NCBI RefSeq assembly: GCF_947568905.1
Contig: NC_079173.1
Location: 19,282,001 to 19,346,000, forward strand
DNA: 64,000 nucleotides
From: Ostrea edulis
Lineage: Eukaryota
Direction of reading: 5' to 3'
This document shows, in pieces, positions 3,362 through 26,800 of this stretch (position 1 is its first letter; the number at the start of each line of letters is the position of its first letter). Position numbers and translations under genes: made by a program. The notes under the pieces were generated by a model. It did not search any database, was not told the origin of the DNA, and worked only from the letters and a program-made list of their open reading frames with translations.

Positions 3362-3405
3362 GCACCAGATGCGCATTTCGACAAATAATGTATCTTCAGT
3401 GATGC
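3362..3405 (-). ncRNA. Minimal type I hammerhead ribozyme motif (PLE-associated), with G10.1 mutated
   Basis: Minus strand reads gcatca-CTGAAGA-tacattatttgtc-GAAA-tgcgca-TC-tggtgc: 6-bp stem I and palindromic stem/loop III. It lies in a ~140-bp insertion (3337-3478) flanked by AGTTGTA direct repeats. Confidence 0.6.
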
Positions 3406-3494
3406 TCAACCGAAATGTTTGAAATCCGAAATAACAATGAAGTTTTAGACCTGTGATAGGGAACAACATTGCCAAAAAAGTTGTATGTAATTCG

Positions 3495-3686
3495 ACTTCC
3501 GTAGCCGAGTGGATAGAGCATCGCACTCAAATCGGCGTGGGTTCGAATCCCGCTCGAGCTGGTAAGTGAGAAAGTTTTCCAGTTTACTTGCAGAACGTCG
3601 GTGGTCTCTTCTCAGGTACATTGTATCTGGGTTTTCTCCTCCACCATTTAAGTGTAGTGGAAAACATCAATCAATCAATCAATCAA
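3495..3686 (+). mobile_element. tRNA-derived SINE (internally deleted; same insertion as 11450)
   Basis: A box gtagccgagtgg, B box ggttcgaatcc, (TCAA)n tail. Confidence 0.8.
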
Positions 3687-3851
3687 TTCATTAGTTTCTG
3701 ATTTCGTATCAATAACCATTCGTTTACTTTTCCGGTGGATATCAGTGGCACCAATGTTTTCATTCATATTTTCAAGTGTAATACTATTAATAGCTTTTCA
3801 ACTACTCAGCATTCCTAAATTCATGTCAAACAGATATTTCTTTTAATTCAG

Positions 3852-3923
3852 AAGTCTGTGGGGGAATGATATAGCCATCTTACCGAATGGGATTTTTGAT
3901 GTATTGACGAATTTACAATTCCT
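3852..3923 (+). CDS. LRR exon, type a (SLWGNDIAILPNGIFDVLTNLQFL)
   Basis: ttcag acceptor, gtaagt donor, 72 nt, open frame, typical LRR consensus. Confidence 0.8.
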
Positions 3924-6900
3924 GTAAGTATACATGAATATAATTTACTTCTGTGACAGCTAAACAGTACCTGTGTTTCAGGAAATCTGATCAAGAATGC
4001 TACACTAGAAATATTATAGATTTAGAGACATAAGAATATGAGTCAATGTCATTGCTTGTAATGATCTCACTTTAATCTAAATTAGTGTGTTAGAATAGGT
4101 CCTCTCATTATTGGATGGAAGATGTACTGAGAGTGTCAATTTTGCTTAAAATTACTGTTATCATGCTGTTTGTGCTGATCAGTTCTTGTAATTACTGCTG
4201 ATTCTGAAACTTTCTGTTAGTGCTAAGAATTATTAATATTTATTGTGGTTTGCACTGTGGGTTCTGATATTTACTGTGGTTTGCACTGTGGGTTCTGCTA
4301 TTTACTTATCATTGCTGGGGAATGCACTGTTGGTAGTGTGAAGTGCTGATAATTACTGTCACTATCAATGGCCTTGCAGGAGGAATGACATTTTTCATTT
4401 TAATCTTCGAAAACCAGGTTTTCTCATAAATATGTATAGTGGTTGGTATCTTTGCAATCGTCTCAATAAGCTGAAAAACAATACACATATCAGGGGATTT
4501 TATCAAAACCTCGTTTTTAAAAACCCACTTTTATTATCTGTATTTAGCCCGGGCACATTTTAGCACCCCTTGCAAGGTCATCGACAGTCACAGCATGTAT
4601 CAGCATTTCACAATATCGACAGTACTTTCCTCACAGCACTTATCAGAACTCACAGTACAAACCACAACAGGTGTCAGCAATTATCAGCACCAATAGAAAG
4701 TTTCAGTACCAACTGCAAAGATATCAGTAATTATCAAAACTTTCACCAGAGAAAAATTCTCGATATCATTATTCGATATACAATCAATAAATCAACGATA
4801 ATTAGAACATTCACAATGGTGTCAGATAAACGGATTTATTCTAAAGTTTTACTACATGCCATCAATGAAAGGTAAAGATAACGAATATTGATGAAAGGTG
4901 AAGATAGTGAACAACGAACAGTGATCACTCATAACTTCTATTTACGATGCAAAATAGAGAGTTGGGCACAGACTCCTGGATATACCAGAAGTGGGATTTG
5001 GTGCCTAGGAGGAGAAAACGTCCCCTGTCGACCAGTCACTCCCGCCTTAAGCCATATCTCTTGATCGGGTATACGGAGTTATCCGTAGTCAAAATCAGTG
5101 TGCCAAGACCGACCTAAAAATCAGCATGAAACACGTCAGACCGATCTCCAAACTCCTATAAGCAATATAAATAGAGGGTTGGGCAAACACATATCCCTGG
5201 ATGTACCGGAAGTGGGATCAGACGCCTAGGAGGAGTAAGAATCCACTGTCGACCGGTCACACCAGCCATGAGCTCTATATATTCACCAAGTAAATGGAGT
5301 TATCAGTATTCGAAATCAGTGCGCCAAATATGGTATAACAATCGGTAAGAAACAAGTCAGACAGCATTTGACCTAATGATAGGTTCTATTGGCAAACTGG
5401 ATCGTTATAACGACCATATAATTTGCTGACTTAAAAGAAAATGGTTGAATCCCTGCGCCATCAGCTAGTTTTTCAATAGCCTGCTTTGATTTTAAAACTG
5501 AACAACCTCTTATGTATCGAATCATTTGAGATATATAAACAGCAAATCCAGGTGATGATGGACTATTGCTACATAATTATGGAAACTTGTCGATTGAGAA
5601 GCTGAAATCAACCCCTTTGTCATAAAGTTGAGTTGTTAGTTTGCCGTTAATATCCACTTTCAATAAAATATCCACATATGAAGCAGAAGTAGACGATTCT
5701 GTGGTATTTTTTTTATTTCAAGTTTAATGGGATATATCGAATCGACATATGAATGAAAATCATTATTGTCAATAAATAATACGTCGTCGATATACAGTGT
5801 ACGTAAATGTCAAAGCGCATTTTAAACAACTCAAGACAATCAGAGTATATCAACACTTTTTTTCAAAATGAATAAAATTATGCTTTTTCTTTTGTGAAAC
5901 TTACACATCATTGCAAACCTTTAAAAAGGTTTTATTAAAGCCGCTAATCTAACACAAAATTGATAAAGAAAACGTGATGTGACAGTTATTTTTCAACATT
6001 GGTTCTCATTATAATGCAAATTGCATATAAGGTGTTGCCACCCGTGCATCTATTACACTATATGTTGGGAATTTGTTTTGAGTCAATGAGAAATTGCAAA
6101 CCAAATTGATCATACGCAGGACACGCAGTGTATCGAATCATTTGGGCGACCTAGATATCATGCACAGGTAATAGTGCAATATTTCTACATACATATATGA
6201 AGTTGATATTGACGGACCTTAAATTGTCTTAGCTACCATAAACCTTATGTGTTTGTTCACCATCATCAGTAAAGAAATAGATTCAAATATAAAACACATA
6301 CAGAGAATTATGTGATGTTTTTTATATATACATGTATAATATATTTCATCATTTGAGCGTTGATCAATTAAGGTTAATAAGGAAATCTTTTTGATTCAGA
6401 CACTTGTGGAAAAATAAAATAGCAACTTTACTAAATGGAATCTTTGATGCATTGACAAAGTTAAAGAAACTGTAAGTATATATATAAATATCTACATACA
6501 AAACAATTATTTGTATTCAGAGGTGAAGATAATGGACAATGTTGAAAAGTGATGAGTTTGTATATCTATTCTAAGCAATACAAAATTAAGAGTTGGACAA
6601 ACATGGACTCCTGGGTAAACCAGACTTGGGAACAGTGTTTAAGAAGATTAAGCATTCCCTATCGACCAACTAAGCATCCCCTGTCGACCAATAAAATCTA
6701 CCATGAGCTCTATAAACGGAGTGCTCCGCAGTCAACATCAGTGTGTAAAGAAAGGCCTACCAATTAGTATGAAACACATTAGATACAAGGTGAAGATAAT
6801 GAACAGTGATCAATTTCGTAACTCCTATAAGCAATACAAAATAGATAGTTGGGCAAACACGGACCCCTAGACACACCAGAGGTGGGATCAGGTGCCTAGG

Positions 6901-9900
6901 AGGAGTAAGCATCCCCTGTTGACCGGTCACACAATTTGACTCATCGGCAGGTTGTATTGGTATATTAGATCTTGATAACGAGCATAGAATTTGCGAAATG
7001 TTCACTTTAAACAAGAATGCTGGAACTCCTGCGATACCACCTTGTTTGTAAGAAGCTTGTCTTGATTAAAAAATATCATAAGAGAACAAAGTTTTGGGTA
7101 TGGAATCAGTTGAAATATACAAACACCATAATACAGGTGATGATGGAATACTCTACATTCCGTGTGTCGTTAGTTTGCCGTTAAGATCTATTTTCAATAA
7201 AATATCTAAGTACGAAGCAGATGTAGATGTATATGTGGTGTCTTTATTTCAAGTTCATTTGAAAATATCCAATCCATATATGAATGCAAATGATTTTGTT
7301 GATAGTTAAAACGACGTCGATATATCAAATTGTAGAGATGAAGGCCTAACAATTGTAGTTCTGAGTTATTACTAGTCATTTTTCAACATTGGTTCTCATT
7401 AAAATGCAAATTTGCATGCAAGGTGTTGCCACCCGTCCATCTATATCAACTCTAAGTTGGGAATTTGTTTTGAGTCAATGCGAATTTACAAACCAAATCG
7501 ATCATACGCAGAACATGCGCTTGTTTATTGAATCAGTCGGACGACGTAGATATCATTCCAGGTGATAGTGGAATATTTCTACATACATGCAAGGTGAAGA
7601 TAACGAACAGTGATCAATCTCATAACTCCTACAAGCAATACAAAATAGATAGTTATAGGAAGTGGATGGTGGCCGACCATATTTTTCCTAGCTGCCATTG
7701 ACTTAATGTGTTCGTTTACCATTAACGTTCCAAATCAATACAGATTCAAATATAAAACACAGATAGAGGATGGTGTGATGTTTTTCTTTCGAATTTACTG
7801 GATAAATTCTGATCAACTTGTTTAATGGAAATCACTGTTATGAGAAAATGAACAACTCGTTCATGATGGATTTAAACTACTTGTTTACAGCCACATTTAG
7901 TGCAAATAACATGCTTTCGCATATTGGATAACTTTAGAAAATTGAATATTTCATCGTTGGAGCGTTGATCAATTAAGGTTACGAGTAATCAGGAAATCGT
8001 TTTGATTCAGAGGCTTGCAGGAAAATGAATTAGCAACGTTACCAAATGGAATCTTTGATGCATTGACGAAGCTAGAGACACTGTAAGTATATCTATATAC
8101 ATAACAATTATTTGTATGCAGATGAGGTGAAGATAATGAACAATGTCAAACAGTGATGAATCTTATATCTATTATAAGCAATACAACATTTAGAATTGGA
8201 GAAGCATGGCCCCTGGGTAAACCAGACATGGGAACAGGTGTTAAAGAAGAGTAAGCATTCCATATTGACCGACTAAGTATCCCCTGTCGACCGGTCACAT
8301 CTACCGTGAGCCCTATAAACGAAGTTATCCGCAGTCAATATCAGTGTGTAAAGAATGGCCTAACAATTCGTATGAAACACATTAGATATAATTTTACTTA
8401 GCGGCAGGTTGTATTGGTAAATTAGATCGTGATAACCAGCATAGAATTTGCGAAATGCTGACTTTAAACAAGAATGTTGGAATTCCTGTAGTACCAACGT
8501 GTATGTAAGAAGCCTGTTTTGATAAAATAAAAAAAAAAGAAGTTCGTAAGGAGAACAGGTTTTGTGAATCGAATCAGTTGAGATATATAAACATCATATA
8601 CAGGTAATATTGAAATACTGCAACATGTTATGTAGATATGGGAAGTTGATGGAGAAGCTGAAATAATTCCGTGTGTCGTTAGTTTGCCTTTAAGATCTAT
8701 TTTCAATAAAATATCTAAGTACAATGCAGTCGTAGAGGTATATGTGGTGTCTTTCATAATATTTCAGGTTCATGTAAAAATATCAACTCCACATATGAAT
8801 GAAAATTATTTTGTTGATAAGTAAAACGGAGTCGATATATCTAAATGTAGAGATGAAGGCCTAATAACTGTAGTTATGACATATTACTAGTCACTTTTCA
8901 ACATTGGTTCTTATCATAAAGCAATTTTGCATCCAAAGTGTTGCCACCCGTACATCTATATAAAATATAAGTTGGGAATTTGTTTTGGGTCAATGGAAAA
9001 TAAAAACCAAATCGATCATACGCAGAATATATGCTTGTATATCGAATCAGTTGGGCGACGTAGATCTCATCCCAGGTGATAGTGCAATATTTCTACATAC
9101 ATATAGGAAATTAATGGTGGCGGACCATAATTTTTCCTAGCTGCCATAAACCTTATGTGTTCGTTTACTAATAGGGTCTCAAATCAATAAAGAAATAGCT
9201 TTAAATATAAAACACAGATAGAAGATTATGTGATGCTTTTATTTCGAGTTGACTGGATAATTTCTGATCAACACGTTTAATGGAAAATATAATTATCAGA
9301 TGATAGACTAACCGTTCGTGATGGATTAAAATTAATGGATTCGCTGTCCCGAATTGCAGTAGGTTAGAAAATAATATATTTCATCATTGGATCGTTGATC
9401 AATTAAGGTTAATCATGAACTATTTTTTATTCAGTAACTTGGGGAGAAATAAAATATCAACGTTGAAAAACGGAATTTTTGATGCATTGACGAAGCTAGA
9501 GATACTGTAAGTATATCTAAATACATAAGAATTATTTATATGCAGAGGAGGTGAAGATAATGAACAATGTCGGACAGTAATGAATCTGATATCTATAATA
9601 AGCAATGCAAATTAAGAGTTGGACAAACATGGACCCCTGGGTAAACCAGACATGGGAACAGGTGTTTAAGAAGAGTAAGCATTCCATATCGACCGACTAA
9701 GTATCCCCTGTCAACAGGTCACATCAATCATAGGCCCTAAAACAGAGTGATCCGCAGTCAACACCAATGTGTAAAGAATGGCCTAACAATTATCATGAAA
9801 CATATTTGACATAATTGACTGAAATATCGAGGGAATTGGTGGTTTAGACAAGAGGCAAAAGGGTCAACTTTTCAATACCCGAAACGGTTCATAATCCGAC

Positions 9901-12900
9901 TGAAAACGCATTTGTCTAATGTCCTATCTCCTGAATCCTGCTGATTAAGTGATTCCCAGTCCGCTCTTGTGTTTAGACTTCCTGGTATAAATTTTGCTAT
10001 GAAAGGAAAATTTATTTCTTTGGCACCAATTCCAAATTTGCTTTACCAGCTGAGTTAACAATTGGAATTTTTTACCAAAATTAAAATATTTCTTTTTAAT
10101 TTTACGAATGACTGGTGTGCCAAAAAGATGCCAAAAGTGTCATTGTATTTATATGATAAAATTGCTGTGCGGAGGACCAAAACCCTTCTGTATTTTGTGT
10201 TTCGCATGTACCCCCCCCCCCCCCCCCACTGCTAGGTCTTAGGCATTTGATGTAAGAATCATTGATACCTTTCAAACGATTATTGATTTCCCGTTTGAAA
10301 CCTCCAGTTAATCTATCTACCATATTAAATCTATTTTCCCTCTCCCGAAATGGGAATCACTGCTTCGAAATGTTTATTTTCTAGCGAACCATTGATCTTG
10401 CATGTAGCGGCAGTATAATTTGGCTGCAATTACAGCCTGAATTATTGAAATTAATTTTGTTATCGGTTGACATATTTCTTTTACAGACATAATTCCTTTT
10501 TTCAGAACCTTATTGGATTCGTCTTTCATTTTTTGAACTTTTTTGTTTGTAAATTCGAAGAGCATATCTACGGAGTTTATTTCGAAACCTAGAAATAAGA
10601 TGATCTGAACTATATCTGATATGTATTTTTCTCCAGGTTAACAATCAATCAATCAATTTAATTTGAAAAACAAAATAAATATAAGAAAATATGAATAAAA
10701 TATTTGATCATCTTCTAAGGTAGAACGACTATTTCTTGAAAGACTTCTGGATGTGTAGAGTTGTCTGAAAACATGAGTGGTAATAAAGCAAAAATCCTTC
10801 ATGCTTAACACAGACAACTTACCACATAATGAAAATGTGCCATTCTGTCGACTGAAAGTTCGCTGAAAGACCCGAGCAGGTGAGTGAATGACAGAGCATT
10901 ACAATTCATTCACCTTTCTGTAACCATTTAGTCACCTTTCTGTACCCATTCAGTCACCTTTCTGTAACCATTCATTCACCTTTCTGTAACCATTCATTCA
11001 CCTTTCTGAAACCATTCAGTCACATTTATGTAACCATTTATTCACATTTCTGTAACCATTCAGTCACATTTCTGTAACCATTCAGTCACCTTTCAGTTTA
11101 CTGAATAACAGTTTTCCTGGGCTTTAAAGTTATGTGTCACCATGTCCTGCAAAGTGGATCACAACATTTTATGCATATAGCCGTATCCGACTTGAAGGTT
11201 ACTCTTTATGGGAATTTAAAGATTGGTCATTCTTCGTTATCGTCCTTTTTTCTAAAGTGATTTAAAGGGGAATGCAGTACTAAATACCACTATTACTATT
11301 AGTGTATTGAATTCTGAACAATATCCTTAGATATTGATGGTTAAATTATTTTCCTGTATTCTCACGTGTAGAACTTGCATGGCATGATATCAGGTAACCA
11401 TTTTTATCTAAATTCCCGTCATGTGTCATATGGAGTTGTATGTCATTCTGCCTTCGTAGCCGAGTGGTTGGGGCATCGCGCTTAAAATCACACGTGGTCT
11501 CACCTCTGGTCGGCGTGGGTTCGAATCCCGCTTGCGCCGGTAAGTGAGAACATTTCCCAGTTTACTTAGAAAGGTCGATGGCCTCTTCCCATCTACATTG
11601 TTTCTGGGTTACCTCTTCCACCAATAAAAACTGGATGTCACCATATCACTGAGAACTTGTTGAGTGTGGCGGAAAACATCAATCAATCAATTCATTAGTT
11701 TCTAATTTCATATCAATACTCATTCGTTTACTTTTCTGGTGAATATCATTGACACCAATGTTTCCATTCATATTTTCAAGTGTTATACTACTGATAGCTT
11801 TTCATTTACTCAACATTGCTAAATTCATGTTAAACATATATTTTTTGTCATTCAGAATCGTGAGTGGGAATGAGATAGCCATCTTACCGACTGGATTGTT
11901 TGATGTATTGACGAATTTACAATTCCTGTAAGTATAAATGAATATCACTCACTTCTGTGACAGCTAAACAGTACATGTTTTTTTCAGAAAAACTTTTCAT
12001 TTTAATCTTCGAAAACCAGGTTTCCTCATACATATGTATAGTGGTTGGTATCTTTGTAATCGTCTCAATAAGCTGAAAAACAATATACATATCAGGGGAT
12101 TTTTTTTAAACCTCGTTTTAAAAAAAAGCACCTTTATTATCTGTATTTACCCCGGGACACATTTTAGCACCTATTGCAAAGTCATCGATAGTCAAAGCAT
12201 TTATTAGCACTTCTCAGTACCGACAATACTTTCCTCAGCACTTATCAAAACTCACAGTACAATCCACAGTAAATGTCAGCAATTCTCAGCACCAACAGCA
12301 ATTTTCAGTACCAACTGCAAAAAGATCAGTTATTATCAAAACTTTCATCAGTGAACATTTTTCGAGCAGGACGTGAAACGATATACAATCAATAAATCAA
12401 CGATAATTTGAACATTCACAATGGTGTCAGATGAAGGGATTGGTTATAAAATTTTACTACACGTCATTAATGAAAGGTGAAAAAACGAACAGTGATGAAA
12501 GGTGAAGATAATGTACAGTGATCAATCTCATAGCTCTTAATATCCGCGGTTGAGTTAAGGCTTTCCCCATAAACACCAGTCCTGTACATAAATGTACTTT
12601 ACCGCACTGGGATATTGCGCGACGTCACAATGAAAGATACGTCATGATGAAGGTCATGACGTACATATCTACAGTCCTTTTGTGGTTGGAAATGTCAAAA
12701 TATTGTTTCGTTATTTACCACCGCTGTCAAACGGTAAACTGTAATCGCGTAAAAGTTTCTGTCAAATGGGTTATATTAATTATCTTTGATATTGAAAAAG
12801 TTTCAATTTCTTTTCTATATAACATACATGCTAAAGTAATATCCATATTATATTGTGATCTTGATATTGCCCCTAATCTGCACGTATAGTTACTTTCACA

Positions 12901-15900
12901 ATGGACTCATTTACATAAACAGGGTTTCCGTATATAAAAATTTCATTATTGGCACGACACCCCGAGGTTTTTAAGTGAAAGATGTTTGATTTATGCGACA
13001 TGTGAACTTCAGTGCAAAAGGAAAGTTAGGGGAGCAATTTCAGGCTTCAACAGAAAATATGTTTTTCAGGCTAGATTCAACTTCGTATGTGCAAAAATCG
13101 CTTCATCTTGCATATTCAATGCAAAAATTAGACATGTTGCAAGTTGCAATAAACTTGGTCTCAGCACTTTTCAAATTAAGAAATTAATATGCTTTGAAGT
13201 TATATTAACTTCAACTTGCAATGATATCTGGATATCGTGCCAATTCAACGATTTATGCATACACGATACGTTTTTATCTTGATATTTGATCACGTGATAC
13301 AGAGTTGATGTAGAGACTGTCGGTCTGGTGAAAAATGTATAGGATGTCAATATACACTTAATGATATATACATATTGTTTTTGTATAAAAGGGTTGTTTT
13401 TACAGAATTGGTCACAAATTGATCTGTTTATTAATGCTTTTTTCCTGACATATTTCTATGGCCCTACTTAACACAACTGCGTCAATATAAAATAAAGTGT
13501 TTGGCAAACACGAACCTCTAGATACACCAGAGGTAGGATCTGGTACCTAGGGGAGTAATCATCCCTTGTCGACCGGTCACACCCGTCTTGAGCCCTATAT
13601 CTTGATCAGCTAAATGGAGTTATCCGTAGTCAAAATCAGTGTGCCAAGAACGGCCTAACAATCGGCATGAAACACGTCAGACCGATATCATAACTCCTAC
13701 AAGCAATACAAAATAGAGAGTTGGGCAAACACGGATCCCCCGTGAATGTACTAGTGGTGAGATCAGAGGCCTAGGAGGAGTAAGCATTTCCTGTGGACCG
13801 GTCACCCCCGCGGTAAGCCCTGTATCTTGATCAAGTAATTGGACTTAACCGTAGTCAAACTCAGTGTGCCAGGAACGGCCTAATAATCAGTGTGAAACAA
13901 GTCAAACAGGATCTGATCTAGTGATGATTTGTATTGACAAAGTAGAACGTTATAACGACTATAGAATTTGCGAAATGCTGACTTAAAAGGAAACGGTTAA
14001 AGCCCCTGCACCATCAACTTGTTTTGTCAGTAGCCTGATTCGATTTAAAAACTGGGAAGTTAACGATGGAGAAGCTGAAATCACCCCACTTGTCATAAAG
14101 TCCAGTTGTTAGTTAGCGAATGATATACACTTTCAATAAAATATCTTAGTATGGTGCAAAAATGGATGACTCTGTGGTGTCTTTTATTTCGAGCTCACAG
14201 GGATATATCGAATCGACATATGAATAAAAACTATTGTTGTCAAGAGATAATACGTCGTCGATATATGTAAATGTCAAAGTGTATTTTAAACAACAAAAGA
14301 CAATCAAAGTATATCAACACACTTTTTTTTTTCAAAATGAACAAGATTATGTTGTTTCTTTTGTATAGCTTGTAAAAAAATTGCAAACCTTAAAAAAAAT
14401 CAATAATAACGCTAATCTAATAAAACTTTGATTAAAAAACACCTTATTCTAAGGACTCCCTAAATTCGAATTCACTGCTAAAGTCGACATAAGAACACCC
14501 CAAAAATATAAATAGCATAAAGTAAGTATAAATACAGGAAACGCAACGTAGATTACCAGGTTATCATTTAGCACTTAGATACTAAATCTTATAGATGTTT
14601 AGATGAGTAATTGAAGATAAATTCGCTTATTGTCCTTAAAGCACTTTTAATAGCTCTAATGTAGTCATTTATTACCTAAATTCCTTATCCAACAAAATGA
14701 CAAAATTTCAAACAATACAGAGTACGTTATAACCATCGAACATCAGACCTCTTTACTCTCTTACTTTAAACGCATACTTTGCCGTTGCTTTTCTTTTGTT
14801 TTACACTTGCAATTTTGGCAGGATTAATGGGTTCAGAGACTTTGTTATTTGCTTTAATTTATTTCGCACGTAGCTCACCAGGATTACCTCCAATGACCGC
14901 GCTCCTGGTAATGTTTCTGTTTTTCGTGCTAAAAAAGTAATGAAAGCTTCATCATCGTTTTCGTCAACATTAAGAAACAAACCTATAATTATCGCATCAA
15001 GCAGAAACATACTGACCCACATTAACTTCATAAAAGGTCTTCAGTCATTAAAATCATAGCAATGTTCTTCATGCGCAGGGCCCTCCGTGGTCGAGTAGTT
15101 AAAGCATCGCGCTTAATATCACACGGCCTCTCACCTCTGGTCGGCGAGGGTTCGAATCCTCCTCGCGGAGGTAAGTGAGAAAGTTTCCCAATTTACTTTC
15201 GGTATGTCGGTGGTCTCTTCCCATGTACAATGTACATAGGTTCTATTTTCCACCAATAAAAACTGGTTGCCACCAAATAACTGAAAAATTGTTGAGTGTT
15301 GCGGAAAACACCAATCAATCTTCATGTGAAATTCCCTTACCTGTTTTAGTGTCAACGGAATCAATTGTCGTCTTTTTTATTTTCTTTGAAGAAATACGCG
15401 TCTGTTGTATTGTGGTAATTGTATTTGTACAGTTGGAAAAGTAGGAAGAGGTTACCAACGTTGCTATTTTGCCTTTTTCTATCCCAATGTCACAATGTAA
15501 TTGCTTCTTTAACAAAAATGGAAAAAGAAAATGATCAGTCATCCAAAACTTACTTTGTTAAACATCACTCTGATCCCTCGCATATGTACTTTGAAGTTGA
15601 AATAAAAACAATACGCTAGAGTTCCTCATTGACAATATCTTCGTGGTCTTTGGTGATCAGGTCTCCCAACAGTCTCTTTAAATTCCCATGAACACGAATT
15701 GCGCTCCTTTGTAAGCTGACCTGTTTCTATATTCATACCAAGCAGAATTTATTCAAAAACGTATACGCAACAAAAAAGCTCGTGTTGTGGCCTTCAATTC
15801 GACATTAGTTATATCGACGACGTTTTGTCTATTGACAATGATAGCTTTAATTCATATATCGATTCGATATATCCCTGCGAGCTCGAAAAAAAGACACCAC

Positions 15901-17773
15901 CTAGTCGTCCACTTCTGCTTCTTACTTAGCTATTTTATTGAAAGTAGACATTAACCGCAAACTGACAACTTAACTGTATGACAAACGGGATGATTTCACC
16001 TTCTCCATCGTCAACTTCTCATATTAATATAGAAATATTCCATTATCACCTGCATATGGTGTATATATCTCTCAACTGATTCGATACGCAATAGCTTGTT
16101 CTGCGTATAGACAGTTTTTAAATCGAGGCAAGCTACTGACCAACAAGTTGATCGTACAGGGGTTTCAATAGTCTTGATTGAAGTCAGCATTTTGCAAATT
16201 ATATGGTTGTTATAACGATCTAGTTCGCAAATACAACTTATCATTGGGTCAAATGATATCTGACATGTCTCATACCGATTGTTAGTCCGTTCTTTGCAGA
16301 CTGATTTTAACTACGAATAACTCCGTTCATCATGATCAGGATATAGCCTCATGGTGGGTGTGACCGGTTGGCAGGGTATGCTTCCGCCTCCTCGTGACCT
16401 GATACCACCTCTGGAGTCTCCAGAGGTCCGTGTTTGCTCAACTATCTATTTTGGTTGATTATAGGAGTTATGAGATTGATCACTGTTCGTTAACTTCACC
16501 TTTTATTTGCATTGTTCCTATCACTGGGTAAATATTCAAGCTAATTCGTCTCGATTACTAGTATTTGTGCAATCTTCAGATTTTACAAACACATAATTGA
16601 TACTTCTGTGATATCGATAATTTAACGCATCTTTGATGGTTATCGTCCCCTGTTCCATAATGTATGACAGGATGAACTGTTCTATAAAGCTCGACTTACA
16701 TTGGCGACGATGTTCTTGCGATTAATTTGTCTGCTATTTTCTGCACGATTTATCACATCGTAAGAAGCTGGGACACTATTGTTTACATTTTAGTGTCATT
16801 TTACATGGTTTCTTGTAATGAGGTTTGGTAACATCTGTATGGTGGACGTATGGACATCTTTAGATTATCGAGTTCTTTTATAATACCACCTGCGCGATCT
16901 CCAGAAGTCGTTCGAGATCTGTGAAAAGTCTTTTGAATGTCCTACGACACTACACTATCTGTAAAATTAAATGTTTGCCCAAATGTCTTCAACTATAGAA
17001 GGTTTACTGTCCGATCAGAAACGTCCGTTCGTGAAATGATTGTGTGGAAGTCGCACAATACAATATACGACATGTACACGGAATGCTTGATTCTCGGTTG
17101 CAATCTCAGTCACTGTCCCCACACATAAAAGCTTAAAATTATCATCATTTTTAACAAGATAATTAGCGAAATACTGATTTTAAAATCAAGTTATTTCTTA
17201 GTGAGCTTCATCGGTATATACATTGGCCATGCTCCATTATCGAGTCAATTGGGAGACATCCATACCATACCCAGGTGATGATGTAATATTGTTACATAGC
17301 GTAGGAAAATGGCGATGGAGAACCTGAAATCAATCCATTTGCCAAAAAAATGTGTGTGTGTGTGTTTTTTTAGATATTATCGCATTTGTTCTGATGTGGA
17401 AGATTATGTGGTGTTCTTATTTCGAGTTGAATGGATACTTTCTAATCAACATATGAATGGAAATATCCATTGTCCAAAAAGTGGGTAAACCGTGTATGAT
17501 TCGTGTTCGTGTTTAAAGTCATATTTCATGCAAATGCCAAAATATCGCTGATTGAATCAGTCTACACAGTAATATATGTCATCATTGTAGCATCATTGTA
17601 GCGTTGATAAATTAAAGTTCCTCATGAAATCTTTATTATTGAGAGACCTAAGGTACAATAACAACTTTACAGAATGGAAAAGATGATGTATTGGAGTTAT
17701 GAGATTGATCACTGTTCGTTATCTTCACCTTGCATTGACATATTGATCCGTTTACCTGATCAAGATGCATATT

Positions 17774-17830
<57 letters not shown>

Positions 17831-20800
17831 GTGCCTTGTTCCAAAACTTGTCCGTAAAACATTTGTGGAACAAGTTTTGGAACAAAGCGCAGTTATACAT
17901 ATAACGATATGTAACACATATTCACACGCGTATACATATTTCAAATCTCGAAAGGTGACAAATTCACTTTGACATGTAATATTTAGAGTATATTATCTAA
18001 GGGAGCATATGCTCGTTGTCGTTTCCATCCGTCCGTCTATCCAGCCGAGCACATTTCCTTAACCTTGCATCAAAATTTGATGATAATTGATCACAAATAA
18101 TTTTAGGGACAGGGATTACAAACCAAATCGATCATACACAGAAGATGCGTTTGTTTATCGAATCAGTTGGGCGACGTAGATATCATAACCAGGTGATAGT
18201 GGAATGTTTCTACATGCATAAAGGAAGTTGATGGTAGCGGACCTTAATTTTTCCTAGCTGTTACAAACCTTATGTGCTCGTTTACCATTAACGTTCCAAA
18301 TCAATGAAAATTATTCAAATAGAAAACATGAATATCATTTTATTTATCATTATCAAAATTTATAACGCGCACACTTTTTCAAAAGTTTAAAACATTAAAA
18401 TTGACTAATTATCAACATAACAGTGTCCATGAAGTAATGATAAGTTAGTTGAAAGCAATGACATGAGTTGGCGCTTGAAAATATTATAATCGCTGATTGT
18501 TCTAATGTTTGTTGGAAGTTCATTCCACAAGGTAGGTTCTATATGGCAAATGACCTTGAAGCAAATCTGTTTGTGTTTGGCGGCAGGGACATTTCGTGTT
18601 TTAACAGCATTGCTTAGGGAGCGAATGTTGTATGGTGATCTTCGAATGCTCAGAATTTCTCTTAAATATGATGGGCTTTCGTTATCACTGGGACATTTAA
18701 AAACAACACATGCAACTTTAAACTTGATCAGAAAATGAACAGGTAACCAATGTAAATGATTTAAAGCCTCTGTAGAACTCTCAGCAGACTTCCACTTTAG
18801 CACAAGTTTTGTCGCACGATTTTGTAATAACCGCATCCATTTGATTGTACGTTTAGGCAATCCGTGTAGTACACTGTTGGCATAACCCTAATGGTTAGTA
18901 ACTAATTAACGATTGTATTAACTGTTTACACAAGTCATCAGTAAGATATTGACGAATGTGTTTAATGTAATGCAAATTCAGGGAAATTATTTTACATCTT
19001 TCACTTACACATTTCTCAAAGGTTAAATGTTTATCTAAAACACATCATAGATCCTTGATGCACGAAGACACTGATAACATTTTTTGACTTTCAAATAAAA
19101 CAAACTCTGTTTTACTTGGGTTTAATTTAAGTCTGTTCAAAAATACTGATAAAGGGCAATATGATGTTTTTATTTCGAGTTGACCGGGTAATTTCTGATC
19201 AATACGTTTAATGGGAATTGTTATTAGAAAATGGACAAACCGTTCGTGATTGATTCAAATTAGTTGTTTAAAGCCACATTTAGTGCAATGACAATGCTGT
19301 CATGTCTCAAAGCAGTTTATAAAATTGAATTAGTTTAGAAAATTATATATTTCATCATTGGAGCGTTGATCAATTAAGGTTAATCAGAAAAGCTTTTTGA
19401 TTCAGAGACTTGGGAAGAAATAAAATATCAACGTTATCAAATGGAATATTTGATGAATTGACGAAGCTAAAGACACTGTAAGTATATATATATATGTTTA
19501 TAACAATTATTTGTATACAGAGGTGAAGATGATGAACAGTGATGAATCATAAAGCTCTTATAAGTAATAAAAAATGAAGAGTTTGACAAACATGGACCCT
19601 TGGATAAAACCAGACATGGGAACAGGTGTTTAAGAAGAGTAAACATTCCCTATCGACCGACTAAGCATCCCCTGTCGACCGGTCACATCTACCACTAGAT
19701 CTATTAACGGAGTGATCCGTAGTCATCAGTGTGTAAAGAATGGCCTAACAATTAGTATGAAACACATTATACATTATTTGACTCAACAACAGATTGTATT
19801 GGTAAATTAGATCGCTATAACGAGCATAGACTTTGAGAAATGCCTATTTTAAACGAAACAATTGAAACCCCTGTAACATCAACTTTTTATCAGTACCTTG
19901 CCTTGATTTAAAAATTGATCATACGCAGAGCTAGCTCTTGTGCATCGACTCAGTTCAGAACATAAATAATAAATAAAGGTGATGATTGAATATTGCTAAA
20001 TATACATAAGTCAAGGTATACGATGGAGAAGCTGGGGTCATCACATTTGTCATCAGGTTGAATGCTTATTTTCCTTTTAAAATTTATGTTCAATAAAATT
20101 ATTAAGTACAAAGCAGAAGTAGAATTATATATGGTGTCTTTTATTTCGACTTCACTGGAATACATTGTATCGATATATGAATGAAAATAATTATTGTCAA
20201 TAAAAAAAGTCATCGATATATCTAAATGTCGATTGCAAGGTCAGTAAATATGTTATTTGTCATGTACAATCCTTTGAATAAATTCTGCCTAATCAGAATA
20301 TAAAAACAGGCCAGCTCAAAGGAGCACAAGTCGTGCCATTTGAATTCTAACAGACTCTTGGAAGACCTGATCACCAACGACTACGGAGATAGATTGTCAA
20401 TGGAAAAAATCCAGCATCGTTTCATAATCAACTTCAAAGTACGTGTTTGCAGTGGCATACTGGTGTTGAACAAAGTAATTTTTTTGATTTACTGATCAAT
20501 ATAGATTAATATTTCTTTTTTTTCATACGCAAAATGTACCAATAGAAAAACAATATCGATGTTTTACATCACACAAGGATGCTCTGGTGTGTCCAGGGGT
20601 CCATGTTTACCCAGCTATCTCTTTTGTATAGCTTATACGAGTTATGAGATTGATCACTGTTCGTTATCTTCACCTCTCTGTGAATGACATAAAATAGATA
20701 TCAGATTCCCATACACTAATCAATTGCACCTTGATATACAATCATTATTAATCTCATGAATCTGTTTAGTGTAACCATTCTCATATACATCAATTATGCT

Positions 20801-23800
20801 ATATTTGACATCTCGATAATTAATGGTGTTGTGATACCTTAGTTTCGATTAATCAGCGAAGAAACCGAACGATGATCAACAAGTGGTCAATTTCATAAAT
20901 CAGGAAAGTTGAATAGAAAAACGATCTTACGGATCTCGACAAAAGGTGAAGATAACGAACAGTGATCAATCTCATAATTCCTATCAGGAATACAAAATAG
21001 ACAGTTGGGCAAACAGAAATCCCTTGATATATCTGAGGTGTAGTTAAGTGACTAGGAGGAGTAACCATCCCATGTTGCCCAGTTGAAAATAAACATCTAC
21101 ATATATGTTGTAACAGAATAAAGTGCTAAACACCTTGTCTTAGTCATCTTAGGGTTTCGAAATGCGGAAATATAGGATGCATCTTCGCCAAACACGCAGT
21201 TAGGAAAGACTGATGCGTTGTCTGATTTGAATACTATACATCGTCGGCTTCGGGTGTTCTTTTCAGTACTGATAAATGTGAATGATAAACTATTACAAAC
21301 AACTTACGAAAGCACCGCTTGTTCATCAAGTAGAGGCTGGAGACGTGCAGTATGTCAAAAATGACAACTTCTGAAAATAGTTAATAGGCCATCTATCCAA
21401 CTGTAGAAGATGCATTGATGAAAATGCTATCAAAATAGTATGATGTTAGGTACATCCTTTCATTGATATTTTGAGATAAGTATCAGTATATACGTCGGTT
21501 GTTCCTTTTTAACATTGGACCACATTTTAAAGCAACTTTGCATACAATATATTCCAAACTGTACATCTTTTTTCATTTACAATTGTTTTTATTATTATGA
21601 TTTCAACTTTTCCATCCTCAACTTTTCATATTTAGGTAGAAATATTCCAGTATTACCTGCATGAAAGGTGAACATATGAAGTTTACATCTCCACTGATTC
21701 GATATGAAAGAGCTTTTTCTACGTATGGTCAGTCTTTAAATCGAAGCAGGCTACCAGCAAACAAGTTAATGGTGCAGGGGTTCCAACAGTATCGTTTAAA
21801 ATCAGCATTTTGCAAATTCTATGGTTGTTATAACGATCTAGTTTGCCAGTGCAATTTACCATTGGGTCAAATGCTGTCAACCTGTTCCATGCCGATTGTT
21901 AGGTCGTTCTTGGCACACTGATTTTGACTACGGATACCTCCGTTTACTTGATCAAGATATATGGCTCTAGATGACCTGTCGAGAGAGGATGCCTACCTCT
22001 CTTAGGTACCCGATCCTACATATGGTATATCACAGAGTGCGTGTTTGCCCAAAGTCGTGCTTTGTATTATTTATAGGAGTTATGAGATTGATCACTGTTC
22101 GTTATCTTCGCCTTTAATTGTTTGAGATGTTGTTTGTTTTTTTTGAGGAAGTGTACAATTACAATCCAAATACATCAGAAGCAAAAAATGCGGTAGTGAA
22201 ATGAATCATTTGGAAGACACAGGTACGATAACTAGGTGATAATGGAATATCGCTACGTAGGTACAGGAACTGATGTTGGTGAACCCGAAATTATCCCATT
22301 TGCCATCAAGTGTATGCGTTCAATTACCATCAATGTCTTTGTTCTGTGAAGAAAAATATCTAAATATAAAACAACATCTCTGTGCTGTTCTATTTTGTTC
22401 ACTGGGTTATCTCTATTCAATATATGTATGGAAATTATATTTGTTAGAAAATAAATAAATGGTAGGCGATGGATCTAAGTCCCATGTTTAAAGCCATACG
22501 GATGAGGTCGTGTATTAAATCAGTTTACATAATAATATATATCATCATTATAGTGTTGGTTAATTAAACTTAGTACATAGAAAATTAAAGAATAAATCCT
22601 TGATGCACTGACGAATCTAGGGATATTGTAATGATATCTATATAGATAGCAATTGTTTGTAGGAAAAGTGAAGATTGTCAATGCGAGGAATTGTGCGAAA
22701 AGTGTATTAATTTGAAAATGGTCTTGATTTTTGTTACTTTATCCTATGAAAGGTGAAGGTAACGAAGAGTCCTCTATCTCATACTGAATGATGCAAACTT
22801 ATTTCAGATGTTCATACAATTTAATTCGTCTGAAGAAATGATTATATCTGATATCTCATAAAATTGATGATATCATGGCATCTTTAAAAAAATTTTGATT
22901 TAAAGTTCACCTTCCTCCAAATTGTAATTAAAATGGTATTGATTTAAAACTAATACCATACCAATTTTTTATGCACCAGATGCGCATTTCGACAAATAAT
23001 GTCTCTTCAGTTATGCTCAACCGAAATGTTTGAAATCCGAAATAAGAATGAAGTTTTAGAGCTATTATAGAGAAAAACAGTGTGCCAAAAAAGTGGAGTC
23101 AAATCTGGAGATTCTCCTTGCTAAAATAAGGAGAAAGAAATATGACCTGCAGATGTACTCTGACATCATACTCACTACAACATACTGAACTTCTATGATG
23201 TTGAAAATTTTGATTATGTTGTTAGTAAAAAATAACGAAATATTACGGTTTAACAACATTTGATAGATGACTCAGTAAAGTGCATTTTCGGAGATTAGAG
23301 CATTGCACTCAAAATTATACGGCCTCTCACCTCTGTCAGCCCGGCTTCGAATCCCCCTCGCGCTGGTAAGTGATACATTTTTCCAGTTTACTTTCGGAAA
23401 GTCTGTGAACTCTTCCCAAGTAAGTTGTATGTGGGTTCTCTTTTCAACTAATAAGAGCTGGGCGCCACCATATAACTGAAACATTGTTGAATGTGGCGGA
23501 AAACATCAATCAATAAATCCGATAATTCACAATGAATGAAAAAGTGAACATAACGAAGAGTGATCAATCTCAAAGTTCCAATAATGAATACAAAATAAAA
23601 GAAAGTAAACACGAACCCCTGAATATGTGAATGTAGCTTTACTTCACCATTGTGTTATAGCGTACTCACACACATATATTGGATCCCGAAATTGTATAAT
23701 ATATAGTATATAAACTTTCAAACGATAGTGGAATAACTCACTCAATGAAAGGACACATCGCATGTGATGGTACAACAATAGTAATTTCACCGATGCATCT

Positions 23801-26800
23801 CCCCCAGCAAAAGCACCAAGATATCGCAGTATTTCAATTTTATATCATTTAATTATGCTACAACTTTGTCTTTTCTATCAATACATTATTTTTGTCTTTT
23901 TCAGTGGATTATATGAAAACCCTCTGCGTTGCAAATGTCCATTAGTCGACATTATCCGCACTGCGAAAACAAGACGATTGCAGTTGATTGATAACCCTTC
24001 CTGTAAAAATCCTGTGACTCTAAGAAAAACATTCCTAAAGGACCTGAAACTTCGAGACGTAGTTTGTGATTCAGGTATACCATCTACCCTTGGGGATACA
24101 GACACCGATCTGGTCTCCACAGCATGTATGTTCCCGATATATTTCATCTATGTACATGCAATTGTCTGAATACATGTAATCCTTGAATTGATATATATTG
24201 TATTATAAGTCATATATACGGGAGTCTAATACAACTATATGCGTTATAGAGACCATGAGGAACTCAATATAGATCCTGAATCACATCTCAAGTAGTTATT
24301 CACAATGCTAGGTGCATCCAACGTGTATTGCAGGATATGTCAACACTTGACCTCCTAAAATGATTTATACCTCAGTATGAAAGTCCTGTGCAACGCGTAA
24401 TCTGATTGGTTTAGGCAGTCACGTGCCTCCCAAACATCATATACTCCCCATCATATTTTACCTCTTCGGCAGCCTCGTGTATTTTCCATAAATTTTACGT
24501 CAAGGTAGACATAGGCTATTGTGATGTCACAATAAGGCCGAGTCGTTGTATTTACATAGTTCATAAGGTACATAATATGCCAGTCTCTGTTACACAGTTA
24601 AGTCGTCTGATTTTCGCTGATACAAAAACAAACAAGTACATCAGCATTCAACGATAATGGAAATACAAAAACTGGTTTTCATATCACCATAGTTCGTTGT
24701 TTGTTCCTTCTAATACGTTGACGGTGCGGTGTTACCGTTAGGGCAATCTGATCTACATACAATGTATAGATGAGCGGGCTCCAATTTCAAATGTATTTTG
24801 TAGTCTTGTTTTGTTTCGGTATAATAAACAATTTATTGCGTGAATGTTCGGGAGATGTGAAGATTTATTCACCCAAGAAAAAAGGATTGAAAAAATCGTT
24901 ATATCTCCCTCGCTGTCATGCAATAAATGTATAATGTTGATGGATTTTATTACGTTTTTCCACTGTTAGAAACGTACTCCTGGGGGAGGGTGTGTGTGTG
25001 CGGTATATGTGGTTGCACCTATATCAAAAGTATTATTAAAACTTTTAAAGTGATGGGTATTTGTTAGAGTAATGAAACAAATCTATATTTTAAAAAAGTA
25101 TATACTTTACAAAAAATAATATCACAGATACTTAATATTTACAAATTCTAGGTTCGGCGATCGGTCGCGGTAGCTCAGTGGTAGAGAATTCGCTTCATAC
25201 GATGGGCGTCTTGATGTTGAGGCCCACTCGATCGTGTCATGTCCACGTCAAAACTAATCCGTAAACATAGGTAGTGATTGTACGTCAACCACAGCTGGTA
25301 ACGTCTCAATATGAGTGATAAATTATCGACGAGACATAAAACAAGCAAGAACCAACAAACCGAGTTCAACAGTGTCCCCATCAGTTTTTCGTAATCAGTG
25401 CACACTACATTTGTACTGAATATAAAACCACCGACATATCATTTGCTTGATGATATTGCAGAAATGATAAGCATCGGTACAAATGTAGACGAGTGTCAAA
25501 TACATAGGATGTTAAAGCACTACTGATGTCTTTCCATGGGATTTTTATGACCCACAAACATTCAAACCAGTATTAAAAAGTCAATAGTCAATAGGTCAGA
25601 ATATAACAGAAAAAAATATTCTACTATGATATATTGGTCTTATCAAATGCAGCTGATAGACACAAACGAAGTATGTCTCAATCTGTAAAATGGAATGACA
25701 ACGTGTTTACAGTTCAACTTTACTGTCGAAAATGAATCGTAGTACATTATGAAAATTTCAATAAACAAAATAAATACAATTTCGTACATCTGCTGTACGT
25801 TGCAGAAGTCCAAGGTAAACAGTTATCCACAGTCCATACGTTTTATCAACGAACATGACAATGTTGTTCGCAGTTCTTCTATATCTCTATTTAAGGAAGT
25901 TAACTCCTGAGCTTTTGAGCACAACTGTGCAGGATGCTACAACTAAGAATTCAGTGGTTCAAAACTGATCCCATTCGTGCAAACATATTACACATCTAAT
26001 GCTGAACCCTATCCAGTTGATTTTTTTGTGTCAATTCAACTTTGGAAAGGGTTTGGCAGGGACTATTCTGTGGCGGAAGGATTCATTAAATAGATCAAAA
26101 AGTGTTAAGTGATATCACAGTTTCTGTTTCATCCAATGTATCGTCTATTTGTGTACTCCTATATACTTGTATCTAATTTGGAACTAGTTCAAATCTTGTA
26201 ATTTATTAACTTGGTTGACATATTAATAAATGTACTCGAAATTTTATTAACAAATGTAGTATTTTCGCCAATAATTGACCTCCACCCCACCCCCACTTTT
26301 TTAAGTTCCATTTTAAATTGTAAGATCATACCTTGAAAATTATGTAAAATTCTAGAAATTGATATTACTACTAGTATGTCCTTTTAAACTCTCAGTTTTG
26401 ATATAATAGAGTTTTTCGTATCTCAAGTGCAGAAAGGTCATTATTCATTTCCATTACTAGTATTATCTTTTTTCTGGAGTGTTAGAAGACGTGATTATGT
26501 ATCTATTTTGTGTAATGATTGATTTGTGTCGCTTATGTTGTTTTGACACCGACAGGCAATCAAGTTTAATTGAATAAATTTTAAGTGCAAAAAGGTCATG
26601 TTTGGAACACTGTAGCTCAATAACAAGCGTTGCATCCCAAGTTTTTTCTTATTAATTTGCTAATTCTCCTTCAATGTAGAAATCAGCAATACCCTTTAAA
26701 AAAAAATAGCGTTATTCCAATAATCTCGGGTGCGAACCTCTTTTTTTCTAAGTATTTCATGATATCAGACTATCCCGATAAAGGACTTTTTACAAGCTTG

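What the first reader, a model, noticed from the sequence alone, without database searches (positions are those of the whole stretch)
5990..22680. LRR exons amplified as modules bounded by Penelope-like elements
Seen: four intact type-b LRR exons (6400, 8011, 9435, 19406) share one module layout: old antisense PLE RT fragment, 72-nt exon, then the 3' terminus of a younger antisense PLE starting 43-50 bp after the donor. The decayed exon at 22570 keeps a terminus remnant about 40 bp downstream; the one at 17644 keeps only the upstream flank. Modules 1-3 are head-to-tail (exon spacing 1611 and 1424 bp), with junctions near the PLE YIDD region. In PLE orientation each exon lies directly 3' of the element end. 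Inference: PLE copies drove LRR-exon copy-number gain, either by unequal recombination between PLE copies or by 3' read-through transduction, giving a retroelement-driven way to lengthen and diversify a surface receptor.
Basis: partly seen in the sequence, partly recalled or inferred. Interest (0 to 1): 0.75.

Follow-up and report, generated by a model that had tools for sequence, protein, structure and literature searches.

The report
LRR exon units carrying retroelement relics
Each small exon coding one leucine-rich repeat in this oyster-like gene does sit between two old antisense Penelope-like retroelement fragments, but exon and fragments were copied together as one 1.5-kb piece of DNA, so the fragments look like passengers, not drivers.

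Summary
Four intact 72-nt LRR exons (6400, 8011, 9435, 19406) each have an old antisense Penelope-like (PLE) fragment upstream (R1). The 3' end of a second antisense PLE fragment (R2) starts about 35-50 bp after the donor. Units 1-3 form a tandem array (5984-9820).

The causal reading is not supported.
- The PLE is a Naiad-type element with tens of thousands of copies.
- The exact spacer/PLE-end junction occurs 114 times in the genome. All 96 copies with up to 2 mismatches lie in two inverted clusters on contig C10. No dispersed copy was seen, which argues against 3' transduction.
- Trees from the PLE part alone and from exon plus non-PLE flank recover the same unit types, so relic and exon were copied as one piece.
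- No in-register R2/R1 hybrid was found.
- A sister gene holds 4.4 units that are 99.3% identical over the whole 1597-bp unit, as unit-by-unit unequal crossing-over predicts.
- The "junction near YIDD" (PLE nt ~3194) lies where independent copies of this family habitually end.

PLE relics make up about 80% of each unit, so they passively supply most of the homology. No RNA data could be obtained.

The parts
3852..3923 (+). 'a'-type 72-nt LRR exon (SLWGNDIAILPNGIFDVLTNLQF). It has no PLE directly next to it and lies in a 3.2-kb block (2729-5971) duplicated at 10710-14439.
5984..9820 (+). Tandem array of about 2.6 exon-plus-intron units (period 1390-1515 bp, 79-86% identity between units).
6103..6325 (-). 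R1 of unit 1: old antisense PLE RT-thumb fragment (PLE nt 3522->3292, 61%).
6400..6471 (+). b-type LRR exon 1 (HLWKNKIATLLNGIFDALTKLKK).
6514..7344 (-). R2 of unit 1: antisense PLE 3' part (nt ~3916->3194), split by a nested younger fragment.
6779..6932 (-). Nested young 154-bp PLE 3'-terminal fragment (95.5% to L014), seen only in this unit.
7345..7494 (.). About 150 bp between the last recognisable base of R2 and the first of R1. Its origin is unresolved: no significant match to PLE nt 3200-3040 or 3720-3523.
7495..7870 (-). R1 of unit 2 (PLE 3522->~3224), interrupted by the 71-bp fragment. The 3' limit is approximate, inferred from the sister-gene maps.
7584..7654 (-). 71-bp PLE 3'-terminal fragment (100% to L014), shared at the same site with units of sister genes.
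8011..8082 (+). b-type LRR exon 2 (GLQENELATLPNGIFDALTKLET).
8125..8859 (-). R2 of unit 2 (PLE 3907->3194, 71%); YIDD codons near 8833-8844.
9009..9315 (-). R1 of unit 3 (PLE 3522->3224, 64%).
9435..9506 (+). b-type LRR exon 3 (NLGRNKISTLKNGIFDALTKLEI).
9536..9816 (-). R2 of unit 3, cut off at PLE nt 3657 where the array ends.
11856..11927 (+). Second 'a'-type LRR exon (IVSGNEIAILPTGLFDVLTNLQF).
17238..17755 (.). Decayed unit: R1 (17238-17522, antisense), then an exon remnant from 17644 whose 3' half is replaced by a sense 63-bp PLE terminal fragment (17693-17755), followed by (TA)n.
18125..18328 (-). R1 of unit 4. It is separated from its exon by an 811-bp insertion (18329-19139) that holds a 151-aa antisense ORF.
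19406..19477 (+). b-type LRR exon 4 (DLGRNKISTLSNGIFDELTKLKT).
19513..20521 (-). R2 of unit 4, the long form (PLE ->2910). The same long form is kept in the last-unit type of sister genes.
22203..22690 (.). Decayed unit: R1 (22203-22478), exon remnant near 22570-22641, and a remnant of the R2 terminus about 40 bp downstream.
23906..24100 (+). LRRCT-like cap exon (NPLRCKCP...PSCKNP...VVCD), probably the end of the LRR ectodomain. Exon limits are not defined.

Best explanation
One ancestral exon-plus-intron unit already contained both PLE relics. R1 is an old 5'-truncated antisense Naiad-type PLE fragment upstream of the exon. R2 is a later 5'-truncated antisense copy that landed about 35 bp after the donor, in TA-rich sequence. 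This unit was then copied at the DNA level, first within a gene and then with whole genes. It now occurs more than 110 times in two inverted clusters on contig C10. Unit number changes by unequal crossing-over, and by deletion, between misaligned whole units. The relics are passengers. They make up about 80% of the unit, so they passively supply most of the homologous length.

Shown: the shared junction, confinement to the clusters, congruent trees and a near-identical recent array.

Inferred: unequal crossing-over as the mechanism, and the order of the insertions.
For: - The element is a Naiad-type PLE. A full copy (L057) has a 1025-aa ORF with GIY-YIG at aa 156-245 and RVT_1 at aa 764-875, and the ORF stops about 225 nt before the 3' end. 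The first look found more than 70,000 candidates.
- The spacer/PLE-end 35-mer gives 114 hits. All 96 with up to 2 mismatches lie at C10 18.46-19.29 Mb (+) or 26.25-27.53 Mb (-). All 100 listed of the 151 exon 29-mer hits lie there too, as do the best 40 DNA matches of the exon flank and of R1.
- In the unit tree, unit 4 groups at 100% support with the last-unit type of sister genes. The unit types are recovered both from PLE-only columns (4 changes, the minimum is 4) and from exon plus non-PLE columns (5 changes).
- A sister gene has 4.4 units of 1597 bp at 99.3% identity across the whole unit.
- 48 of 49 sampled units keep an open 72-nt exon.
- The 'a' exon block was duplicated with no PLE next to the exon.
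- Independent copies of this PLE end at nt 3214-3228, in 3 of the 16 independent 5' ends outside the units. Unit R2 ends at 3194 in the same zone, next to the YIDD codons (nt 3214-3225).
Against: - The founding duplication is too old (about 20% divergence) for its junction to be read. About 150 bp between R2 and R1 cannot be assigned.
- The tandem-type and last-unit-type R2 part company inside PLE sequence (nt ~3194 against 2908). A breakpoint within a PLE relic therefore cannot be excluded.
- 51 exon hits and 14 junction hits (2-3 mismatches) were not listed, so a rare dispersed copy is not strictly excluded.
- There are no RNA data and no population data.
Confidence: 0.8

Rival explanations
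1. The first duplication arose by unequal recombination between the two same-orientation PLE relics flanking one exon (R2 against R1). Later growth was by ordinary unit-by-unit exchange.
For: R1 and R2 lie in the same orientation and overlap in PLE nt 3224-3522. Tandem-type R2 stops inside PLE sequence, whereas the singleton type runs on to nt 2908.
Against: - Between exons both relics are present whole (R2 to nt 3194, then R1 from nt 3522). There is no single hybrid element.
- R1 and R2 are only 64-66% identical, which is poor substrate for homologous exchange.
- The 995-bp units join R2 at nt 3546 to the left edge of the R1 block, out of register.
- PLE DNA is about 80% of the unit, so breakpoints in it are expected anyway.
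Confidence: 0.1
2. Read-through transcripts of R2 carried the adjacent antisense exon along and were retrotransposed (3' transduction, possibly with head-to-tail PLE insertion), adding exon units.
For: In PLE orientation the exon lies about 35-50 bp beyond the element's 3' end. Naiad PLEs often insert as partial tandems (PMC8557442). PLE machinery has copied intron-bearing host genes in a rotifer (PMC3846280). A like idea was proposed for Tetrahymena LRR exon arrays (PMC6564038).
Against: - No dispersed copy was found. All junction copies with up to 2 mismatches and all listed exon copies are inside the two clusters, in gene orientation and in frame.
- All units share one R2 5' end and one R1, instead of variable truncation points.
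- R2 is old and decayed (about 70% to an active copy) in every unit.
Confidence: 0.03
3. Independent PLE insertions hit the same spot after each exon because of target preference, so the modules only look copied.
For: Naiads prefer microsatellite-like targets (PMC8557442), and the intron starts with TA-rich sequence.
Against: An identical 35-nt junction is found in 31 copies and a near-identical one in 114. Flanks are homologous on both sides. Partition trees are congruent.
Confidence: 0.01

Closest known systems
Tetrahymena LRR genes with arrays of 90-bp exons next to REP LINE-like retrotransposons (Xiong et al. 2019, PMC6564038)
   Same: One LRR per small symmetric exon, highly variable exon number, and retroelement copies physically next to the exon/intron repeat units. 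Unequal crossing-over was proposed, possibly together with retrotransduction.
   Different: Here the retroelement is a Naiad-type PLE present only as old relics derived from one insertion each. The units are confined to two clusters rather than dispersed. The retrotransduction branch was tested and not supported.
Naiad-type (N-terminal GIY-YIG) Penelope-like elements of bivalves, e.g. Penelope-2_CGi (Craig et al. 2021, PMC8557442)
   Same: [quoted passage not shown] Heavy 5' truncation, tens of thousands of copies, and no canonical hammerhead ribozyme found.
   Different: R1 and R2 are dead fragments. Nothing here shows activity on host exons.
PLE-mediated copying of intron-containing host genes in Adineta vaga (Arkhipova et al. 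2013, PMC3846280)
   Same: A precedent for PLE machinery multiplying host sequence with its introns retained.
   Different: There the copies are framed by PLE terminal repeats and target-site duplications at new loci. Here no new loci and no such framing were found.
Repeat-number change by unequal crossing-over in LRR genes (general knowledge, e.g. plant resistance-gene clusters)
   Same: Tandem repeat units, paralog clusters, and variable solvent-face residues.
   Different: The unit here is an exon plus a 1.4-kb intron made mostly of transposon relics.

Membership tests
Naiad-type Penelope-like element (N-terminal EN+ PLE) | Reverse transcriptase domain with a YxDD motif | tested here: met
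   RVT_1 hit at aa 764-875 of L057 (E 5e-4, below Pfam's cut-off) and at aa 429-540 of L013. FRYIDD is read directly, and YIDD is aa 533 of the 690-aa copy.
Naiad-type Penelope-like element (N-terminal EN+ PLE) | GIY-YIG endonuclease at the N-terminus and none after the RT | tested here: met
   PF01541 at aa 156-245 of the 1025-aa ORF (23.7 bits against a cut-off of 22.6 on the N-terminal 330 aa). The ORF ends in the RT thumb, about 225 nt before the element's 3' end.
Naiad-type Penelope-like element (N-terminal EN+ PLE) | No canonical hammerhead ribozyme; frequent 5' truncation; very high copy number in bivalves | tested here: met
   The Rfam gathering scan of the window found only tRNA-like hits. 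5' ends are variable. The first look found more than 70,000 candidates.
Naiad-type Penelope-like element (N-terminal EN+ PLE) | Phylogenetic placement within the Naiad clade and the CxC motif | not tested
   No tree with reference Naiads was built. Cysteine pairs are visible upstream of GIY-YIG but were not compared with the published motif.
TE-mediated exon duplication by recombination between flanking TE copies | A hybrid TE copy at the duplication junction, in register | tested here: not met
   R2 runs to nt ~3194, then about 150 unassignable bases, then R1 from nt 3522. The 995-bp variant joins nt 3546 to the left edge of the R1 block.
Retroelement 3' transduction of host sequence | Copies of element end plus flank at new, unlinked loci | tested here: not met
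   All junction copies with up to 2 mismatches (96) and all 100 listed exon copies are in the two C10 clusters.
Retroelement 3' transduction of host sequence | Target-site duplications framing element plus transduced flank | tested here: inconclusive
   A short AACAATT..TGT similarity at both ends of R2 lies within AT-rich or PLE-colinear sequence. It is not distinguishable from chance.
Extracellular LRR protein with LRRCT cap | LRR consensus LxxLxLxxNxL repeated in 24-residue units | tested here: met
   Exon peptides, and conservation of N5, L10, F15, L18 and L21 in 48 units.
Extracellular LRR protein with LRRCT cap | LRRCT four-cysteine cap, signal peptide, membrane anchor | tested here: inconclusive
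   The CxC...C...C pattern is read directly at 23906-24100 and is kept in about 18 sister genes. Pfam gives no hit even at E 10, and the Atlas gives only weak LRRCT-type leads at 0.78. Signal peptide and anchor were not located.

The most novel reading that the evidence does not exclude
The 1.5-kb units, made mostly of transposon relics, make this family a fast-evolving germline repertoire. The family has about 18 genes and at least 150 exons. Unit number would differ between genes, and perhaps between individuals, through frequent unequal exchange. Meanwhile the first 10 codons of each exon (the concave binding face) diversify faster than the introns. On this reading the relics matter as bulk homology that raises the exchange rate, not as active elements.
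Probability: 0.3. Interest if true: 0.5.

Novelty: new member of a known kind. Interest (0 to 1): 0.3.

Why it matters
A retroelement-driven way of lengthening a receptor would be notable, but the evidence points to ordinary DNA-level amplification of an exon-plus-intron unit that already held two dead PLE fragments.

What remains of interest is the family itself. One LRR per 72-nt symmetric exon occurs in at least 150 copies in two inverted clusters. Unit number varies from about 1 to 6 per local array, and one array is 99% identical between units. The binding-face codons vary more than the neighbouring introns. That makes it a good locus for studying how invertebrate LRR repertoires change, and a caution that tight, repeated TE-exon adjacency can come from a single insertion.

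Tried and rejected
- Hammerhead ribozyme or other RNA family in the PLE terminus: the Rfam gathering scan found only four tRNA-like hits, all far from the finding.
- R2's 3' part exapted as a conserved splicing element. Across all unit types, identity peaks from the exon's 3' part through the first 300 bp of R2. Within unit types, intron identity is flat at 0.85-0.95. The gradient therefore reflects differences between types, so the idea was rejected.
- The stretch 7374-7494 as the tail of R2 (PLE nt 3160-3100), as the 3' part of R1 (nt 3643-3523), or as a PLE terminus: none is better than shuffled sequence, so it is left unassigned.
- A target-site duplication around R2: not distinguishable from chance.
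- The 995-bp units at C10:26.667 Mb as in-register R2/R1 hybrids: they are out-of-register deletion variants.
- Pfam on the LRRCT exon and on window PLE ORF pieces: no hits.
The exons are not shown to be spliced or expressed.
Exons were handled one by one, by reference.
Full report
WHAT IS THERE

The window is G000:C10:19282001-19346000 of an 895-Mb, AT-rich genome. Earlier notes of this scan call it flat-oyster-like.

On the + strand there are open, AG/GT-bounded 72-nt exons, all in the same phase, each coding one 24-residue leucine-rich repeat.
- 'b' type: 6400, 8011, 9435 and 19406.
- 'a' type: 3852 and 11856.

An LRRCT-like open frame (NPLRCKCP...PSCKNP...VVCD) follows at 23855-24169. No further LRR exon was found in the 10 kb upstream of the window.

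THE REPEAT STRUCTURE

Self-comparison shows a head-to-tail array from 5984 to about 9820. It holds about 2.6 units of 1390-1515 bp, 79-86% identical to one another. A fourth unit lies at 18115-18328 plus 19140-20232, interrupted by an 811-bp insertion. Decayed units lie at about 17238-17755 and 22203-22690.

A separate 3.2-kb block holding the 'a' exon (2729-5971) is duplicated at 10710-14439. No PLE lies next to that exon.

THE RETROELEMENT

A 187-aa antisense ORF at 29250-29813 led to more than 70,000 first-look candidates in the genome. Natural long copies were fetched (L013, L014, L057).

L057 has a 1025-aa ORF with GIY-YIG at aa 156-245 and RVT_1 at aa 764-875. The ORF ends in the RT thumb, about 225 nt before the element's 3' end. 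This is the permuted, N-terminal-endonuclease architecture of Naiad-type PLEs. That type is reported to dominate bivalve genomes, to be heavily 5'-truncated, to prefer microsatellite targets and to lack canonical hammerheads (PMC8557442). Rfam found no hammerhead here.

MAPPING THE UNITS ON L014

Each b exon has two antisense fragments.
- Upstream, R1 covers PLE nt 3522->3224 at 60-72% identity.
- Downstream, R2 has its 3' terminus about 35-43 bp after the donor. It runs to nt 3194 in units 1 and 2, to 3657 in unit 3 where the array ends, and to 2910 in unit 4.

Two further fragments are nested in the units.
- A young 154-bp PLE fragment (95.5%) sits in unit 1's R2 at 6779-6932.
- A 71-bp terminal fragment sits inside unit 2's R1 at 7584-7654.

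Two corrections apply.
- Over the same PLE interval R1 is 64-67% and R2 67-75% identical to the active copy, and R1 against R2 is 64-66%. Both are old.
- The 71-bp fragment is shared with units of sister genes.

The exon at 17644 was destroyed by a sense 63-bp PLE terminal fragment.

THE FAMILY

The exon with its flanks has 306 first-look candidates. The best 40 are all on C10. A 29-nt exon pattern has 151 hits against 0 for the control. All 100 listed lie at C10 18.46-19.29 Mb (+) or 26.25-27.53 Mb (-).

The 35-nt spacer/PLE-end junction has 114 hits. The mismatch classes 0, 1 and 2 (31 + 41 + 24 = 96) are fully listed and lie only in those two clusters. R1 behaves the same way.

The LRRCT exon has about 18 close copies in the clusters. 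There are thus roughly 18 genes, each with many units. The window's gene is the last of the + cluster.

(a) 3' transduction. This predicts dispersed copies, and none was seen. All copies are in gene orientation inside the clusters. All share one R2 5' end and one R1, rather than variable truncation points. The caveat is that 14 junction hits and 51 exon hits with 2-3 mismatches were not printed.

(b) PLE-by-PLE recombination. This predicts an in-register hybrid relic between exons. Instead R2 is present to nt ~3194 and R1 restarts at nt 3522. Between them lie about 150 bases that match neither PLE nt 3200-3040 nor nt 3720-3523 better than shuffled sequence. Units of 995 bp at C10:26.667 Mb, a candidate for such hybrids, join R2 at nt 3546 to the left edge of the R1 block, out of register.

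The point where tandem-type and last-unit-type R2 diverge (nt ~3194, about 20 nt from the YIDD codons at 3214-3225) lies in a zone where independent copies of this family end. Examples are the 97%- and 95%-identical copies at 1531-2218 (to nt 3228) and 29016-29718 (to nt 3222), and the copy at 5139-5794 (to nt 3214). Counting the unit R2, this makes 4 of the 17 independent 5' ends in the window, against about 0.6 expected if ends were uniform (my estimate). The 'junction near YIDD' may therefore be R2's original 5' end. In that case the long form in unit 4 needs another explanation. I could not decide between the two.

WHAT DOES EXPLAIN THE COPIES

A tree of 49 units places unit 4 with the last-unit type of sister genes (100% support). 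The other units fall into types shared between genes.

The types are recovered both from PLE-only columns (4 label changes, the minimum possible is 4) and from exon plus non-PLE columns (5 changes). Relic and exon therefore have one history. The types were defined on the whole-unit tree, so the test is one of congruence, not of independence.

In a sister gene (C10:27.449-27.456 Mb) 4.4 units of 1597 bp are 99.3% identical over the entire unit. The high-identity block ends at indel differences between unit subtypes. This is what unequal crossing-over between whole units gives.

PLE-derived DNA is about 80% of a unit (my estimate). It supplies most of the homology, but only passively.

The window's own units have long end branches (0.1-0.38 against a median of 0.017). 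Two of its exons are decayed and its LRRCT is only 63-71% identical to its sisters. This gene may be a decaying member.

SIDE RESULT

48 of 49 sampled units keep an open exon. The first 30 nt of the exon (repeat positions 1, 3, 4, 6 and 8) are the least conserved part of the unit: 0.65 between types, against 0.87-0.93 in the adjacent intron. This agrees with earlier scan notes about binding-face diversification. I did not run a formal selection test.

COMPARISON WITH WHAT IS KNOWN

The closest precedent is the Tetrahymena LRR family. It has 90-bp exon arrays with LINE-like REP copies next to the exon/intron units. [quoted passage not shown]

PLE machinery has copied intron-bearing host genes in a rotifer (PMC3846280).

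The present case is a further example of exon-unit amplification with transposon relics aboard. It is not a new mechanism.

The scan found the same pattern before, 804 kb upstream in the same cluster (s1-274718), and reached the same verdict. I reached mine from independent tests on this window and the genome.

LIMITS

No RNA or population data were available. The N run near 39.9-40.0 kb was left alone.

Noticed in passing
G000:C10:18.46-19.31 Mb (+) and 26.23-27.59 Mb (-): The LRR family sits in two large clusters of opposite orientation about 7 Mb apart. Parts of the minus cluster are near-identical copies of each other: units at 26.83 and 27.45 Mb differ by 0.1% or less, and those at 27.04, 27.30 and 27.53 Mb are likewise close. 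This points to very recent large segmental duplications (or an assembly duplication).
   Followed up: partly
L046+L055 (G000:C10:27444000-27462000), array at about 27.449-27.456 Mb: There are 4.4 tandem units of 1597 bp at 99.3% identity, four of them with the identical exon peptide DLEGNQLGTLPNGIFDALTKLQT. This is a very recent gain of LRR exons in a sister gene.
   Followed up: yes
window 8011-8040 and the same part of all b exons: The first 10 codons of the exon (concave-face positions) vary more than the flanking introns, while the rest of the exon is nearly fixed.
   Followed up: partly
window 1531-2218, 5139-5794, 29016-29718; L004, L008: Independent copies of the Naiad element often end at nt 3194-3240 of the reference copy, next to the YIDD codons. 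This looks like a preferred 5' end, either a truncation hot spot or a short subfamily.
   Followed up: partly
window 7584-7654; L047, L048, L050: A 71-bp PLE 3'-terminal fragment inside R1 is 95-100% identical to the active element's terminus in several sister genes, although the sequence around it is only 62-75% like the PLE.
   Followed up: partly
window 18405-18860 (-): A 151-aa ORF (…LHWLPVHFLIKFKVACVVFK…SYLREIL…) lies inside the 811-bp insertion in unit 4. From memory it resembles the C-terminal end of a LINE ORF2. Pfam gave no hit.
   Followed up: no
window 17760-17860: A long (TA)n microsatellite follows the PLE terminal fragment that destroyed the exon at 17644. This fits the reported microsatellite bias of Naiad insertions.
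   Followed up: no
window 10879-11142: About 12 tandem copies of a 22-bp (11+11) unit, ACCATTCAGTCACCTTTCTGTA, lie between the b array and the second 'a' block.
   Followed up: no
window 48373, 52613, 55677, 55915 (+): Four tRNA-like Rfam hits (29-55 bits) lie in the region that another first-stage note describes as LTR mini-elements with tRNA-like promoters.
   Followed up: no
window 36349-37617 (+): A 423-aa open frame looks like the C-terminal half of a non-LTR retrotransposon RT (…YADDIALIA…), flanked by (GA)n/(TC)n runs. A similar flank is repeated near 40.2-42.1 kb.
   Followed up: no
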